From Haliotis rufescens (taxonomy: Eukaryota): a stretch of 64,000 nucleotides of DNA. Below are positions 4,116 to 7,230 of the stretch, piece after piece (the first letter of the stretch is position 1; each line of letters opens with the position of its first letter). The DNA lies in NCBI RefSeq assembly GCF_023055435.1, contig NW_025964353.1, positions 1,550,001-1,614,000 of the forward strand. Direction: 5' to 3'. Below the pieces are notes generated by a model. It searched no databases. It was not told the origin of the DNA and saw only the letters and a list, made by a program, of their open reading frames with translations. A program made the translations under genes and the position numbers.

Positions 4116-5043
4116 CGAGTTCATGTTAAACGGGGGAGAGGGCGTAGAGGAGACCGGTTGATATGTCCCAGACAAATCATAAGGAACATTTAAGGTTCTC
4201 CTAATTATGATATAGAATTTAAATGTTTCACGTCCATTTGTATTGCAGCGGAGTCTTAGTGTGCCTTCGCGATGAATTCAGATAAATACACTTACTTCCC
4301 TTAAACCACGTAAAGAGTACGTAAGCTTCGTTATGTTGATGAATGTACCATGTGCGCCGCAAACATTTGCAGTCTCTTTAACAAAAAACCTTACGAGACC
4401 CACACGTTTTCGGGGATATTGAAAGGCTACCGTGTCGTTTTGCGGTGTTGAAAATGTTAGTACTCAATATAAAAAGAAGTCATCGTTAAAGAATATACGT
4501 ATGTATCAGCAATATGTATATGTACTCCTCGTTCCAGCACTATTGAGCACAATAAACTAAGGCGGTTTCATAAAGAAACTTTTTTAAACAAGGTGTGTGT
4601 GCATTGTGAAATCGTCCACCTTCATAATTATTGATGAAATGTATCGCCTGGGGTTTGGGTACTTTTACGAGGGCAACTATCGAGGCATAACCAGTGTTTG
4701 AGAGCATGTTGCTCGTTAGGCAGCACTCGTCCATATTCCATCCAATGACCGTGGCATGTACATCTCATCTGCACCAGACAAACCAATGATCCATATTGCG
4801 AGCATCGACCGAGGCTGTTTGGGACATGAAACGTTTTGATTTAAAGTTCACACGGCAGTATTTCAGCCACCTGGGGCACCAGTGTTTAGAATCCCAAAGT
4901 AACACTACCAGGCGAGCACTAAAACTAGCTCAAATCCGTTACGCTTCGTATCATACCGCCTGACAGCGTTGATTTTATTTAACTCCAACGACCAAAAAAA
5001 AGAAAGTTAAAACAGAACAAATGGTTGTCATAATTTACGAACA

Positions 5044-5049
5044 TTTATT
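5044..5049 (-). terminator. candidate polyadenylation signal of ATF4
   Basis: AATAAA on the minus strand ~70 nt after the stop codon. Confidence 0.5.
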
Positions 5050-5119
5050 ACATCGAATTCACACACCTTTCATCCACAATATGTACAAGTTGACATTCAC
5101 ACTAACTTTTATCTACACT

Positions 5120-6310
5120 TCACGACTTAACGCCCTTGGCTTTTAACACCTCTGACATGAGGTCCTTCATGTACTGAATCTCGCGTGTCAACTGATCAAC
5201 TTTGTCATGTAGTTCTTTGTTCTTATCCTCGAGACCATTTTCCTCACTTTTTACATCTTCGGCTTCTGCCTTTTTCTTCTGGCGATATCTGATGGCAGCG
5301 TTCTTGTTTTGCAGCTTCTTTTTGTCTTTCTTAGAAAGAAACTCAACATGAAGATCTAAGTCATCTGTGTCCTTAACCTTAGACTTTGTACTACGCCCGC
5401 TAGACTTAGAATAGGGCGACGACCTAATTCTAGATTTGCCATTTGATTTAGGGGTATTGTCCAAAAGCATCGCTTGTAGCTCACTGCAAGTGGATGCGTC
5501 ACTCACAACGTCTGTCGCACAACTTGAGTGGGGGGAGGAGGGCTCGGAGCCAGACAGGAGGCTTTCTACATCTTCTGCGGAGAGAGGTGAATGCATGATT
5601 CCATCCATGTTTGTTATATGTATGGGAGACATGGGAGTCTCGAGACTAGAGTCCAAGGACACAGCGCCCAGGTCTATAGTTGGAGCCACCTGTGCCTCTG
5701 GTGACGGTGGGGTTGATTCCGGCTCCAAGCCCTGCTCTATCAAGCTTCGTAGAATTTCATGACCCTTGGCCTCAGAAGAGGTGTCTGCAGCTTCCCATGA
5801 AGTTTCTGGGACTGAATTGACATCCATGGCACTAGCAGAGTCCTCCACCAGGCTCTGTAGCATCTCCGTGATGCCAACATTCTCCATCCACTCATCGCAG
5901 AAGGGGTCTGGAAAAAGCATTGAACATATTGAAATAAATGGCCTTAAAAGTAATCAGTATTTAACAAAACAGATTTATTCCACGATATTATTCACCATTT
6001 TAAGTCTTAACTAGGAAAACGCCCATTACCAAATCAACTTGGTTTAGTTTCCGGGTTGAACACTCGACCTTGACCTTATGATACGGTCAACTCGTGACCT
6101 TAAACACGCACCTGCGATATGATCTGTCTGAGCTCCAAGCAGCGCGCTGAGGTCATCGACGCCGCTATCGAGCGGAGTCTTGACAACATCTGTCGACTCT
6201 AAGTCGACGTTCTTCCATGGATCATCGAACAGGGTCAGTCCGAGCGAAGGCTCGAGCTGCCAGTCCTCCGACAAGAGGTTGAGGTCCTCCATGTTGAGTG
6301 TAGAAGTCAT
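5120..6310 (-). CDS. ATF4: ATF4/CREB2-like bZIP transcription factor, 328 aa, 2 coding exons
   Basis: Coding exons 6310-6112 and 5907-5120 (GCAG|gtgcgt ... tttccag|AC), 987 nt in frame. The C-terminal bZIP KKKLQNKNAAIRYRQKKKAE...LTREIQYMKDL matches the ATF4/ATF5 family, and the N-terminus is acidic. A second in-frame ATG at 6292 (caacATGG) may be the true start. Confidence 0.93.
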
Positions 6311-6775
6311 CGTAGGTATAAATGGGTTCTGTATCTTGTGCCTTTACAGCAATTGCCAGGGCGAAGAGGAAAACGACATTGTGTTGGGGTCTGAAAGAAA
6401 AAGCTCTCGTGTCAGCCATAAATCTAGAACCAACGATTTGTGGGGGGAGGAGAAATTAAGGTCATTGAAATTGTCAAACATAAAAATTGCATAACAGCTA
6501 TTTAATTCACAAATGTGTGTAGATACAATAAAAATGGAGTTCATATAACCTTATAAAGATAACATACTTCATAATTCCAAGTGCGATTGATAATGGACAA
6601 AATATTAATTGTGTCGTCCATATGGCGGGAAGTAACGCGTGGCACATGTGGACATGTCTAGTCTAACTGCGCAGTTATTTTTAAGTAATAATTAAGCACA
6701 TATAATATCACAATGTAGCACATAAATGTAAATTAAAACGATCAAATGTGTATATTAATAATGTACTTACGCCAT
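6222..6775 (-). CDS. ATF4 uORF2, spliced, overlapping the main CDS out of frame (57 aa)
   Basis: ATG GC|gtaagt at 6775-6771 joins to acceptor tttctttcag| at 6390 (or an in-frame alternative at 6423). It reads MAPQHNVVFLFALAIAVKAQDT...DPVR*, with the stop ending at 6222, giving an 89-nt overlap with the ATF4 CDS. Confidence 0.8.
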
Positions 6776-6816
6776 AGTGCAAAATTATTTGCACGGGTGT
6801 TGCGGGGGTTGCCGGT

Positions 6817-6828
6817 TTACGCTGCCAT
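6817..6828 (-). CDS. ATF4 uORF1 (Met-Ala-Ala-stop)
   Basis: The minus strand reads gtgATG GCA GCG TAA in leader exon 1. A 3-codon uORF1 is the hallmark of ATF4 leaders. Confidence 0.85.
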   Translation of the reverse strand: MAA

Positions 6829-6864
6829 CACGAAAGGTTCAACGTGTAGACTTTCTTGGTAGCT

Positions 6865-7230
6865 GGTAAAACTGAGAATGGAGAGGTGCGGGCGATGTGG
6901 CCAGCTAAAAAGTGCGCTTAGTGTGAAATATTACTACGCGTGACGTCTACAGCTGCCCGAATTAGCTAAATATTCACGTCTATGTGATCATTAGCTTCAT
7001 TTTGAAGTTAAATTACACTTGAACCATATTTACAATATTGGCTTTTGAAACAAACTAGTATATTTATAAAGGTTCTGATGCACTATCTTGCGAAGCGGAT
7101 GTGTAGGTATTTCTAGGGAGTAAACAAAGCATAGGGTTGCATCAGAAAATTCTGGCGGTGTGCCAAAACATGTGATATGACGTAGATCCTGTGAATGCTA
7201 TCACGTGTGATCTGTTATTCGATTGGCCAG
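6865..7230 (-). promoter_or_regulatory. ATF4 promoter: Inr-like TCAGTT, CRE-like, C/EBP-ATF (CARE) and CCAAT motifs
   Basis: Inr-like TCAGTT at ~6870-6875 (minus); TGACGTCT at 6941-6948; TGATGCAAC at 7136-7144 (minus); TGACGTAG at ~7178; CCAAT at ~7222-7226 (minus). Confidence 0.55.

What the first reader, a model, noticed from the sequence alone, without database searches (positions are those of the whole stretch)
6330..6814. Apparently deeply conserved nucleotide motifs and intron position in the ATF4 leader
Seen on the minus strand: CGGCAACCCCCG (6803-6814) between the uORFs, an intron immediately after uORF2 ATGGC, and TTGCTGTAAAGGCACAAGATAC inside uORF2 (peptide IAVKAQDT). From memory, not verified here, the human ATF4 leader has CGGCAACCCCCA before uORF2, an intron after ATGGC, and TTGCTGTAACCGACAAAGACAC (VAVTDKDT). 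If real, conservation between a mollusc and vertebrates points to an extra cis-element (RNA-binding protein, modification or ribosome-queuing site) or to a functional uORF2 peptide.
Basis: partly seen in the sequence, partly recalled or inferred. Interest (0 to 1): 0.78.

Follow-up and report, generated by a model that had tools for sequence, protein, structure and literature searches.

The report
Abalone ATF4 leader: ancient intron, weak motifs
This is the stress-switch leader of the abalone ATF4 gene; its two small upstream reading frames and the intron that splits the second one are shared with fish and mammals, but one of the two short DNA look-alikes to the human leader is only partly supported and the other looks like chance.

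Summary
RNA-derived contigs splice 6390|6771 right after uORF2 ATGGC in 3 of 4 runs.

The gene is the only ATF4-like bZIP gene found in this Haliotis genome.

Intron position: supported. The same position, after the fifth base of uORF2, is seen in two teleost ATF4 paralogues, a bivalve-like lineage and an unassigned soil animal. It is in print for mammals (PMC3479206).

Motif CGGCAACCCCCG: partly supported. CGGCAAC recurs in 3 of 35 other lineages, one of them a teleost (expected 0.44). It is absent from most.

Motif TTGCTGTAAAGGCACAAGATAC: not supported. It fits no fish leader better than chance. A printed human ATF4 siRNA target shares only the 9-mer TTGCTGTAA. In abalone that TAA ends a nested third uORF.

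uORF2 peptide: no amino-acid-level selection in relatives. Differences by codon position are 49/45/52, against 152/128/283 in the CDS.

The features that are widely shared:
- a strong start context at the uORF2 AUG;
- a small GTGC/GCAC hairpin in the spacer;
- a second AUG 9-24 nt downstream.

The scan noted this stretch twice before (s1-816405, s1-816559).

The parts
6771..6891 (-). Known part of leader exon 1 (the transcript reaches at least 6891)
   Evidence: RNA-derived contigs lie on 6771-6891 (run X6), 6771-6865 (X1) and 6771-6830 (X13). No ATG lies between 6891 and uORF1.
6817..6828 (-). uORF1: ATG GCA GCG TAA, three codons plus stop
   Evidence: uORF1 has three codons in 28 of 32 related lineages. 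The same 12 letters occur in bivalve-like L022.
6803..6814 (-).
   Evidence: CGGCAAC is found in 3 of 35 other lineages (L028 teleost, L037, L022) against 0.44 expected; 4 of 500 shuffles reach this.
6777..6794 (-). Predicted 7-bp hairpin GTGCAAA-TAAT-TTTGCAC, ending 1 nt before the uORF2 AUG
   Evidence: It is present in the MFE and centroid folds. GTGC/GCAC pairs occur in 22 of 36 lineages and their stems extend further. Against: z = 0.02 for the 58-nt fold.
6771..6775 (-). uORF2 start ATGGC, with A at -3 and G at +4; these are the last five bases of exon 1
   Evidence: Across 36 lineages A at -3 occurs in 34, G at +4 in 29 and C at +5 in 25.
6391..6770 (-). Leader intron, 380 nt, GTAAGT...TTTCAG, phase 2 in uORF2 codon 2; partly retained
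   Evidence: The joint 6390|6771 appears in 3 of 4 runs. The X5 contig keeps the intron, and X1 and X6 also hold low-depth intron contigs.
6112..6390 (-). Exon 2: the rest of uORF2, the nested uORF, the main AUG and the first 66 codons of ATF4
   Evidence: Contigs and joints; sequence.
6344..6379 (-). Nested third uORF (11 codons plus TAA), out of frame with uORF2, starting 16 nt after the uORF2 AUG and ending 33 nt before the main AUG
   Evidence: frame of the ORF ending at 6344. A second ATG at offset 9-24 is found in 24 of 33 lineages against 6.2 expected.
6331..6352 (-).
   Evidence: It is not conserved beyond chance in 32 lineages.
6222..6390 (-). Exon-2 part of uORF2 (55 codons plus TGA at 6224-6222); it overlaps the main ORF by 89 nt, out of frame
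   Evidence: Translation; main ATG position.
6308..6310 (-). Main ATF4 start codon
   Evidence: The annotated H. cracherodii protein P0001 aligns from this Met.
5908..6111 (-). Coding intron, 204 nt, phase 1
   Evidence: The joint 5907|6112 appears in 4 of 4 runs. Fish L038 has a phase-1 intron within one codon of this position.
5120..5907 (-). Exon 3: the rest of the ATF4 coding sequence with the bZIP domain; stop at 5122-5120
   Evidence: Pfam bZIP_1, E = 5.4e-11. 97% identical to H. cracherodii 'activating transcription factor of chaperone-like'.

Best explanation
The stretch is the 5' leader of the one ATF4 orthologue found in an abalone genome, and it most likely works by delayed reinitiation, as in mammals.

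Proposed mechanism:
- A scanning ribosome translates the three-codon uORF1 and resumes scanning.
- When ternary complex is plentiful, it restarts at the strongly placed uORF2 AUG (or at the second AUG 16 nt further on). It then reads past the out-of-frame ATF4 start, so ATF4 stays off.
- When eIF2 is phosphorylated, more ribosomes pass uORF2 and start at ATF4.

Shown here: the anatomy, the splicing and the conservation.
Inferred from the mammalian system: the stress response itself.

The intron that cuts uORF2 after its fifth base is an ancestral bilaterian intron kept by descent, as is the coding intron. It marks uORF2 of molluscs and vertebrates as the same element.

The spacer carries a partly conserved CGGCAAC / C-rich box followed by a small GTGC/GCAC hairpin.

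The resemblance of TTGCTGTAA... to the human leader is most likely chance. In abalone this string holds the stop of a nested third uORF.
For: Gene identity:
- bZIP_1 domain.
- 97% identical to the H. cracherodii ATF4-family protein, with fish ATF-4 among the hits.
- One match in the genome.

Anatomy and splicing.

The same design occurs in 45 of 80 fetched loci, which form 32 protein clusters. It consists of a 2-3 codon uORF1, a 37-78 nt spacer and an overlapping uORF2.

Intron after base 5 of uORF2:
- Teleost L080 against transcripts L074 and L076.
- Teleost L038 against transcript L028.
- L064 against transcript L068.
- L022/L024, with donor ATGGC|GTAAGT and an acceptor matching the L017 transcript.
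- Donor side only, by pattern: L019 and L031.
- Mammals, in print: PMC3479206 (passage read).

The coding intron is also shared, within one codon and in the same phase.

Start context: A at -3 in 34 of 36 lineages, G at +4 in 29 of 36, C at +5 in 25 of 36.

Hairpin:
- TTGCAC in 16 of 36 lineages (3.46 expected; 0 of 500 shuffles reach it).
- GTGC..GCAC pairs in 22 of 36 (shuffle mean 4.1, maximum 10 of 300).
- Stems extend by 1.77 further pairs against 0.64 under the null (0 of 2000).
- Spacer fold z averages -0.93 (p = 1.3e-4), against -0.12 for a CDS control.

Motif C at chance.

No peptide selection: codon-position differences are 49/45/52 (p = 0.78), against 152/128/283 in the CDS (p = 8e-17).
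Against: - No translation or stress data exist for abalone, so the mechanism is by analogy.
- The tool's fold of the 58-nt exon-1 part has z = 0.02, and 96 of 200 shuffles fold as well. The abalone hairpin stands out only when the G-poor 41-nt spacer is folded alone (z = -3.0).
- GTGC and GCAC are each enriched on their own, so sequence and structure cannot be cleanly separated.
- The 3' arm overlaps the CACC of the start context in several lineages.
- A same-length control at the start of uORF2 also folds somewhat better than shuffles (z = -0.57).
- Most lineages are unnamed metatranscriptome contigs and are related to one another. L022 is kin of L017, and L031 of L034. Shuffle tests therefore overstate independence.
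- Fish exon 1 was never seen in genomic DNA; only the acceptor side was.
- I could not compare the human leader itself, nor other Haliotis species.
Confidence: 0.8

Rival explanations
1. One reading: CGGCAACCCCCG and TTGCTGTAA...GA.AC are two cis-elements conserved from mollusc to human, acting as a binding site for a protein, a modification site or a ribosome-queuing site.
For: - CGGCAAC is exact in teleost L028, heterobranch-like L037 and bivalve-like L022, always between the uORF1 stop and the hairpin.
- L037 matches the 12-mer with 1 mismatch (0 of 500 shuffles).
- A printed human ATF4 siRNA target contains TTGCTGTAACCGACAA.
- Human uORF2 holds m6A sites that are conserved in vertebrates (PMC11058473, passages read).
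Against: - 32 of 35 other lineages lack CGGCAAC, among them two of the three fish.
- The 22-mer has 11-12 mismatches of 22 in all three fish, and overall it is at chance (36 of 500).
- Local alignment to abalone finds nothing at that place in any lineage.
- By eye: fish L028 matches the human 21-mer at 15 of 21 places, abalone at 11 of 21. The letters abalone shares with human but not with fish are just TAA plus one more. Abalone against L028 is 7 of 21.
Confidence: 0.12
2. uORF2 encodes a functional, conserved peptide.
For: - The first 10-14 codons are well kept within each group of relatives.
- Many lineages have a loosely similar Ala/Leu-rich start.
Against: - In 10 independent close pairs, differences fall evenly on codon positions (49/45/52, p = 0.78). 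The CDS of the same pairs shows the expected third-position excess (152/128/283).
- Changed codons are mostly non-synonymous, for example 3 synonymous against 16 non-synonymous, and 6 against 11.
- Peptides of distant lineages do not align.
- The conserved start of uORF2 is also read in a second frame by the nested uORF.
Confidence: 0.06
3. The intron is kept at this exact place because it works there. Either an exon-junction complex in the spacer couples uORF termination to mRNA decay, or regulated retention turns the gene down.
For: - PMC3479206 proposes that in mammals the uORF1 stop triggers decay through this intron's junction.
- In human cells the retained-intron form V1 is nuclear and unstable, and the weak donor is conserved in vertebrates (PMC8933703).
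- In abalone the intron is retained in the only contig of run X5, and at low depth in X1 and X6 (8.7 against 975, and 5.5-8.8 against 189).
- With the intron kept, uORF2 reads ATG GCG TAA, in abalone and in L019, L022 and L031.
Against: - The coding intron is conserved as well, so plain descent explains the position.
- In abalone the uORF1 stop lies only 46 nt from the junction, and in other invertebrate-like leaders 42-69 nt (spacer lengths, plus 5). That is at or under the printed 50-nt rule.
- The abalone donor's intron side is the strong consensus GTAAGT, not a weak site.
- Contig depths are rough measures.
Confidence: 0.25
4. The two-uORF design of molluscs and vertebrates arose independently, by convergence.
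For: Such designs can evolve repeatedly: yeast GCN4 uses unrelated uORFs for the same logic (PMC2172506).
Against: - The intron position and phase inside uORF2 codon 2 are the same.
- The same three-codon uORF1 occurs in 28 of 32 lineages.
- The start context is the same, and the order CGGCAAC box, hairpin, AUG is shared.
Confidence: 0.03

Closest known systems
Mammalian ATF4 5' leader (delayed reinitiation through uORF1 and uORF2; Lu, Harding and Ron 2004, PMC2172506)
   Same: - A three-codon uORF1.
- A longer uORF2 running out of frame into the coding region. The overlap is 89 nt here; 83 nt is printed for mammals in PMC5666893.
- A bZIP main ORF of the ATF4 family.
   Different: - The spacer is about half as long: 41 nt here, against about 90 nt from the uORF1 stop to the intron in mammals.
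- A nested out-of-frame third uORF starts 16 nt after the uORF2 AUG; the three fish leaders have none.
- Function was not tested in any mollusc here.
[quoted passage not shown] 2012, PMC3479206) and its retained form V1 (PMC8933703)
   Same: The intron sits directly after the uORF2 start. A retained-intron RNA exists beside the spliced one.
   Different: - In print the conservation is stated for mammals (position) and for vertebrates (donor). Here it is extended to teleosts, abalone, a bivalve-like lineage and one unassigned lineage.
- The intron side of the abalone donor is consensus GTAAGT.
- The junction is only 46 nt from the uORF1 stop.
Human ATF4 stem-loops SL1, SL2 and SL3 and the m6A sites A225/A235 (Smirnova et al. 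2024, PMC11058473)
   Same: RNA structure and short nucleotide features add layers to uORF control. Some are conserved among vertebrates.
   Different: - SL1 and SL2 lie before uORF1, and SL3 lies in the uORF2/ATF4 overlap. The hairpin seen here lies between uORF1 and uORF2.
- I found no mention of such a hairpin in the passages read or in the search listing.
Yeast GCN4 leader
   Same: The logic is the same: a permissive first uORF followed by inhibitory downstream uORFs, read out through ternary-complex level.
   Different: The sequences are unrelated. GCN4 has four non-overlapping uORFs and no intron. It works alike but is not a member of the same family.

Membership tests
ATF4-type two-uORF delayed-reinitiation leader | The main ORF is an ATF4-family bZIP protein | tested here: met
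   Pfam bZIP_1, E = 5.4e-11. 97% identical to the H. cracherodii protein, with fish ATF-4 among the hits. The alignment keeps the basic-region columns.
ATF4-type two-uORF delayed-reinitiation leader | A very short (three-codon) 5' uORF1 | tested here: met
   ATG GCA GCG TAA at 6828-6817. It is the first ATG of the known transcript.
ATF4-type two-uORF delayed-reinitiation leader | uORF2 overlaps the main start codon out of frame | tested here: met
   In the spliced RNA (joint), the exon-2 part reads 55 codons to the TGA at 6224-6222. That is 89 nt past the main ATG at 6310.
ATF4-type two-uORF delayed-reinitiation leader | Translation of the main ORF rises when eIF2-alpha is phosphorylated | not testable with these tools
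   This needs reporters or ribosome profiling in a mollusc.
Conserved ATF4 first intron directly after the uORF2 AUG | The exon junction lies directly downstream of the uORF2 start codon | tested here: met
   The joint 6390|6771 lies after ATGGC. The same offset is seen in L080, L038, L064 and L022. Mammals: PMC3479206.
Conserved-peptide uORF (CPuORF) | Purifying selection on the amino-acid sequence of the uORF | tested here: not met
   Tested in relatives, not in Haliotis itself. Codon-position differences are 49/45/52 (p = 0.78), against 152/128/283 in the CDS.
   - 12-mer: 10 of 500 shuffles reach the observed sum. CGGCAAC occurs in 3 of 35 lineages against 0.44 expected.
- 22-mer: not met. 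36 of 500 shuffles reach the sum, and fish show 11-12 mismatches.
- The human leader itself was not compared.
Rfam RNA families | A match at the gathering score | tested here: not met
   Window 6100-7000 gave only a chance-level SNORA19 match in the intron: 21.3 bits against a gathering score of 80, E = 0.79.

The most novel reading that the evidence does not exclude
The ATF4 leader carries an RNA module that dates to the bilaterian ancestor and is held by selection on the RNA, not on the peptide. The module consists of:
- a CGGCAAC / C-rich box;
- a 5-7 bp GTGC/GCAC hairpin between uORF1 and uORF2;
- a best-context AUGGC split by a phase-2 intron;
- a twin AUG 9-24 nt downstream.

The hairpin and the twin AUG would set how many rescanning ribosomes are caught before ATF4. 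This would be an unreported tuning layer of the integrated stress response, one that could be tested directly in mammalian reporters.
Probability: 0.3. Interest if true: 0.65.

Novelty: new member of a known kind. Interest (0 to 1): 0.5.

Why it matters
ATF4 is the central output of the integrated stress response, and its leader is the textbook case of uORF control in animals. That the two uORFs are conserved from invertebrates to mammals is already in print (PMC5666893).

This case adds the following:
- The intron that cuts uORF2 after its fifth base is at the same place in abalone, a bivalve-like lineage, an unassigned soil animal, teleosts and (from print) mammals. That makes uORF2 one inherited element, more than half a billion years old by general knowledge of the protostome-deuterostome split.
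- Leader RNA from uORF1 to the first 60 nt of uORF2 is at least as conserved between close relatives as the protein-coding part, with no codon-position bias.
- Three candidate RNA features are picked out for ordinary reporter tests: the hairpin, the twin AUG and the CGGCAAC box.
- The eye-catching string match to the human leader inside uORF2 should not be trusted.

Tried and rejected
- Leaders of named molluscs and fish. Other Haliotis species, named molluscs and tetrapods could therefore not be compared. I used one scan of metagenome contigs instead.
- Naming lineage L068. The third protein search returned 25 proteins, none with a name, so that lineage stays unassigned. L017's nearest named relatives are heterodont bivalves at 35-42% identity.
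- Fish exon 1. I looked for it in the 624 nt upstream of exon 2 in L038 and found only chance-size matches. L080 starts inside the intron.
- Pattern scan of the 33 loci set aside (genomic, partial or lacking the uORF pair) for uORF1-spacer-ATGnn|GT. L019, L022/L024 and L031 fit. The other hits in that call lie in or after coding parts, or lack any likeness to a leader, and I did not count them. Insect-like contigs L015, L016, L029 and L030 gave none, so the intron cannot be judged there.
- Covariance model of the hairpin. I considered it and did not build it. The stems fall into two classes (GTGC..GCAC and GCAC..GTGC) that may each go back to one event, so pair counts would look stronger than they are.
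- Rfam on 6100-7000: nothing real.
- Paralogue in the same genome: none at E <= 0.001.
- Full-text search for the window's 11-mer: 6 papers, none of the 5 listed about ATF4.
- Supplements were closed. Figure S1A and Data S3 of PMC11058473 (vertebrate leader alignment, oligos) and the supplementary tables of PMC7530721 (taxonomic range of conserved-peptide uORFs) may bear on the motif and peptide claims, and I could not see them.
- Loci dropped before counts. Of the 80 loci, 45 had both a uORF1 of at most 5 codons and an overlapping uORF2 by my script, and one representative per protein cluster (32) was used. The other 35 were left out:
  - L002 and L004: the contig starts after uORF1.
  - L035 and L039: leaders too short.
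  - L042 and L049: full leaders without an overlapping uORF, which count against universality.
  - L043 and L073: no short uORF1.
  - The rest: genomic or partial.
  - L019, L022 and L031 were added back as genomic leaders.
- The spliced model was searched exon by exon only: exon-3 translation, exon ORFs. The joined coding sequence and the joined uORF2 were sent to no search tool.
Full report
WHAT IS IN THE WINDOW.

Read on the minus strand, the stretch holds these features:
- uORF1 is ATG GCA GCG TAA (6828-6817).
- A 41-nt spacer follows (6816-6776).
- uORF2 starts ATGGC (6775-6771), followed by GTAAGT.
- An acceptor ...TTTCAG ends at 6391, and exon 2 starts at 6390.

Translated from its first full codon, exon 2 gives 55 codons ending in TGA at 6224-6222, and they contain IAVKAQDT. 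The main ATG is at 6310, so uORF2 overlaps the main ORF by 89 nt in another frame.

Its stop is the TAA inside TTGCTGTAA (6346-6344).

RNA EVIDENCE.

One search found 20 public runs that hold the stretch. I laid the contigs of four runs from four studies on 5000-7000.
- Leader intron: the joint 6390|6771 skips 380 nt with GT..AG ends on the minus strand. It is present in 3 of 4 runs (X1, X6, X13).
- Retention: the single contig of X5 runs unbroken from 6112 to 6800, so it keeps the leader intron while lacking the coding intron. X1 and X6 also hold intron contigs at low depth (8.7 against 975; 5.5-8.8 against 189). These are contig depths and therefore rough.
- Coding intron: 5908-6111 is spliced out in 4 of 4 runs.
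- 5' end: contigs reach 6891, and no ATG precedes uORF1 in that part.

The runs are labelled RNA only by a guess, but spliced contigs show they derive from RNA.

THE GENE.

- The exon-3 translation has a bZIP domain.
- It is 97% identical to a Haliotis cracherodii protein of 328 aa, and fish ATF-4 proteins are among the hits.
- The window's genome has one match at E <= 0.001.
- I searched exon by exon. The joined coding sequence and the joined uORF2 were not sent to any search.

COMPARATIVE SET.

Instead I scanned metagenome contigs with an alignment of 23 ATF4 proteins. That scan confirmed 137 stretches and kept 80 loci, many of them full mRNAs from metatranscriptomes.
- 45 of the 80 have a uORF1 of at most 5 codons and an overlapping uORF2. 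They form 32 clusters at 60% protein identity.
- Two full leaders, L042 and L049, lack an overlapping uORF.

Assignment by BLAST to the named proteins:
- L028 is a teleost ATF4 (76% to Pempheris).
- L074 and L076 are a second teleost paralogue (40% over the full length).
- L001-L006 are caenogastropod-like.
- L012 and L037 are heterobranch-like.
- L017's nearest named relatives are heterodont bivalves (35-42%).
- L068 has no named relative.
- The remaining lineages are unassigned animals.

INTRON POSITION: SUPPORTED.

Likeness between a genomic contig and a related transcript begins exactly at base 6 of uORF2, behind a pyrimidine-rich ...CAG acceptor, in three cases:
- teleost L080 against L074 and L076;
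- teleost L038 against L028;
- L064 against L068.

Further cases:
- L022/L024 show both sides. The donor is CACC ATGGC|GTAAGT, and an acceptor 225 nt on is followed by sequence matching the L017 transcript.
- L019 and L031 show the same uORF1-spacer-ATGGC|GTAAGT on the donor side only, found by pattern.
- For mammals, Ait Ghezala et al. [quoted passage not shown]

The coding intron is shared too. In abalone and in fish L038 it falls in phase 1, within one codon of the same place before the D.F...W-M motif. The whole exon plan is therefore ancestral, and the leader intron needs no special explanation beyond descent. What it does show is that uORF2 of molluscs and vertebrates is one inherited element.

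MOTIF CGGCAACCCCCG: PARTLY SUPPORTED.

- Best ungapped matches in 32 spacers: L037 with 1 mismatch (0 of 500 shuffles), teleost L028 with 3 (0.034) and L023 with 3 (0.066). The summed distance is 151 against 160.4 +/- 4.7, reached by 10 of 500 shuffles.
- The 7-mer CGGCAAC occurs in 3 of 35 lineages other than abalone (L028, L037, L022), against 0.44 expected; 4 of 500 shuffles reach this.
- In all four leaders it sits after the uORF1 stop and before a C-rich run and the hairpin.
- L022 also has the same 12-letter uORF1 as abalone.
- Local alignment of the abalone spacer reaches p <= 0.05 in 7 of 35 lineages (L014, L034, L037, L048, L061, L022, L019) and in 0 of 3 fish.
- The recalled human string could not be checked.

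MOTIF TTGCTGTAAAGGCACAAGATAC: NOT SUPPORTED.

- Best matches in the uORF2 part before the main ATG have 8-13 mismatches of 22. The fish have 11-12. Only L025 stands out (8 mismatches, 0.006), at an unrelated A-rich place. The sum is 352 against 360.5 +/- 5.9, reached by 36 of 500 shuffles.
- Local alignment to abalone finds likeness only in the first 25 nt or so of exon 2 (L014, L021, L025) and once near its end (L012). It finds none at the motif.
- Two papers print a human ATF4 siRNA target, CAGCGTTGCTGTAACCGACAA (PMC8060268 and PMC6175245, passages read).
- By eye, that 21-mer matches fish L028 at 15 of 21 places and abalone at 11 of 21. Abalone matches L028 at 7 of 21. What abalone shares with human beyond the common TTGCTG is mainly TAA, where the three fish read CCG, CAT and CTT. 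A shared 9-mer between two stretches of about 100 nt is expected about 3 times in 100.
- In caenogastropod-like leaders the nested uORF ends at a similar place with a similar tail. The local constraint in gastropods may therefore be that stop, not a vertebrate-shared site.

uORF2 PEPTIDE: NO SELECTION SEEN.

In 10 independent close pairs, the non-overlapping part of uORF2 differs evenly by codon position (49/45/52, p = 0.78). The CDS of the same pairs shows 152/128/283 (p = 8e-17). Changed codons are mostly non-synonymous. No DNA of other Haliotis species was available, so abalone itself is untested.

WHAT IS WIDELY SHARED INSTEAD.

Across 11 close pairs, identity by segment is:

| Segment | Identity |
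|---|---|
| 40 nt before uORF1 | 0.61 |
| uORF1 | 0.89 |
| Spacer | 0.79 |
| uORF2 +1..+30 | 0.85 |
| uORF2 +31..+60 | 0.78 |
| uORF2 from +61 to the main ATG | 0.68 |
| uORF2 / main-ORF overlap | 0.81 |
| Next 300 nt of CDS | 0.73 |

The start context of uORF2, anchored on its ATG, has A at -3 in 34 of 36 lineages, G at +4 in 29 of 36 and C at +5 in 25 of 36. 'ATGGC' is thus the best-context start expected of a uORF that must catch ribosomes.

An open word count in the spacers puts these words on top:
- TTGCAC: 16 of 36 lineages (3.3 expected).
- TGCAC: 22 of 36.
- GTGTGC: 8 of 36.
- TAATT: 6 of 36 (0.8 expected).

GTGC and GCAC stand 3-25 nt apart, in either order, in 22 of 36 lineages, including abalone and all three fish. 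Shuffles give a mean of 4.1 and a maximum of 10 of 300. These cores extend by 1.77 further Watson-Crick pairs, against 0.64 under a random-flank null (0 of 2000). The resulting stems are 5-7 bp in 17 of 22 lineages and end 0-33 nt before the AUG.

Spacer folds are better than shuffles on average (z = -0.93, p = 1.3e-4, n = 33). A CDS control gives -0.12, but a control at the start of uORF2 gives -0.57.

Against this: the tool's fold of the 58-nt abalone exon-1 part shows the hairpin in both the MFE and the centroid, yet z = 0.02.

A second ATG lies 9-24 nt after the uORF2 ATG in 24 of 33 lineages (6.2 expected, maximum 14 of 300). It is out of frame in 13, abalone among them, in frame in 10 and in the third frame in 1. 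None of the three fish has one.

MECHANISM.

Shown: the anatomy, the splicing and the conservation.

Inferred from the mammalian system (PMC2172506, passages read): delayed reinitiation after uORF1, capture at uORF2, and bypass under eIF2-alpha phosphorylation.

My own inference:
- The hairpin slows rescanning in a short spacer, so that ternary complex is regained before uORF2.
- The second AUG acts as a back-up catch.
- The uORF2 stop lies 110 nt before the coding-exon junction, which would allow junction-dependent decay.
- With the intron retained, uORF2 reads ATG GCG TAA.

KNOWN OR NEW.

- That the two uORFs are conserved from invertebrates to mammals is in print (PMC5666893).
- The intron position in mammals is in print, as are its retained form and the weak donor conserved in vertebrates (PMC8933703).
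- I found no statement of the intron position outside vertebrates, nor of a hairpin between uORF1 and uORF2. This rests on my searches and on the passages read in PMC11058473 and PMC12839439. Those searches do not cover subscription journals or supplements.
- The abalone leader is a new member of a known kind. The hairpin and the twin AUG are leads, not findings.

LIMITS.

- Lineages are related to one another and mostly unnamed, so shuffle tests overstate independence.
- The k-mer, hairpin and second-AUG patterns were noticed in the same data on which they were tested.
- The human leader itself and other Haliotis species were not compared.

Noticed in passing
Caenogastropod-like leaders (L001, L002, L005, L006) have a nested uORF of 8-9 codons with a similar tail. 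13 of 33 lineages have an out-of-frame second ATG at offset 13-16.
   Followed up: partly
window 6391-6770 (minus strand); L019:857-924, L022:1023-1109, L031:3600-3685: If the leader intron is retained, uORF2 becomes ATG GCG TAA (two codons), because the donor GTAAGT supplies an in-frame stop. The same holds in three other leaders. Run X5's only contig keeps this intron.
   Followed up: partly
window 5908-6111 (minus strand); L038:1490-2199: The coding intron (phase 1, just before the D.F...W-M motif) is at the same place, within one codon, in abalone and in a teleost genomic contig.
   Followed up: partly
window 6940-6948 and 7177-7185 (minus strand): Two ACGTCA (CRE/ATF half-site-like) strings lie about 50 and 290 nt upstream of the furthest RNA contig end. 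They could be ATF/CREB sites in the promoter, or chance.
   Followed up: no
L040 and L044 (main ORF 853 and 873 aa); L058 (616 aa): These much longer bZIP proteins sit behind the same leader design: a three-codon uORF1, a spacer with a hairpin, and an overlapping uORF2.
   Followed up: no
L036, L045, L048, L059, L066, L075 (spacers): A group of unassigned, mostly soil-derived lineages has the hairpin in the opposite order (GCACAC-loop-GTGTGC), and an in-frame pair ATGGAAGCCAAYATGGC opens uORF2 in four of them.
   Followed up: partly
window 6652-6753 (minus strand, inside the leader intron): A weak SNORA19-like match (21.3 bits against a gathering score of 80, E = 0.79), most likely chance.
   Followed up: no
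window 6776-6790; L022, L031, L058, L074, L076 (10-20 nt before the uORF2 ATG): TAATT occurs just upstream of the uORF2 start in 6 of 36 leaders (0.8 expected). These include abalone, two bivalve-like leaders and two teleosts.
   Followed up: no
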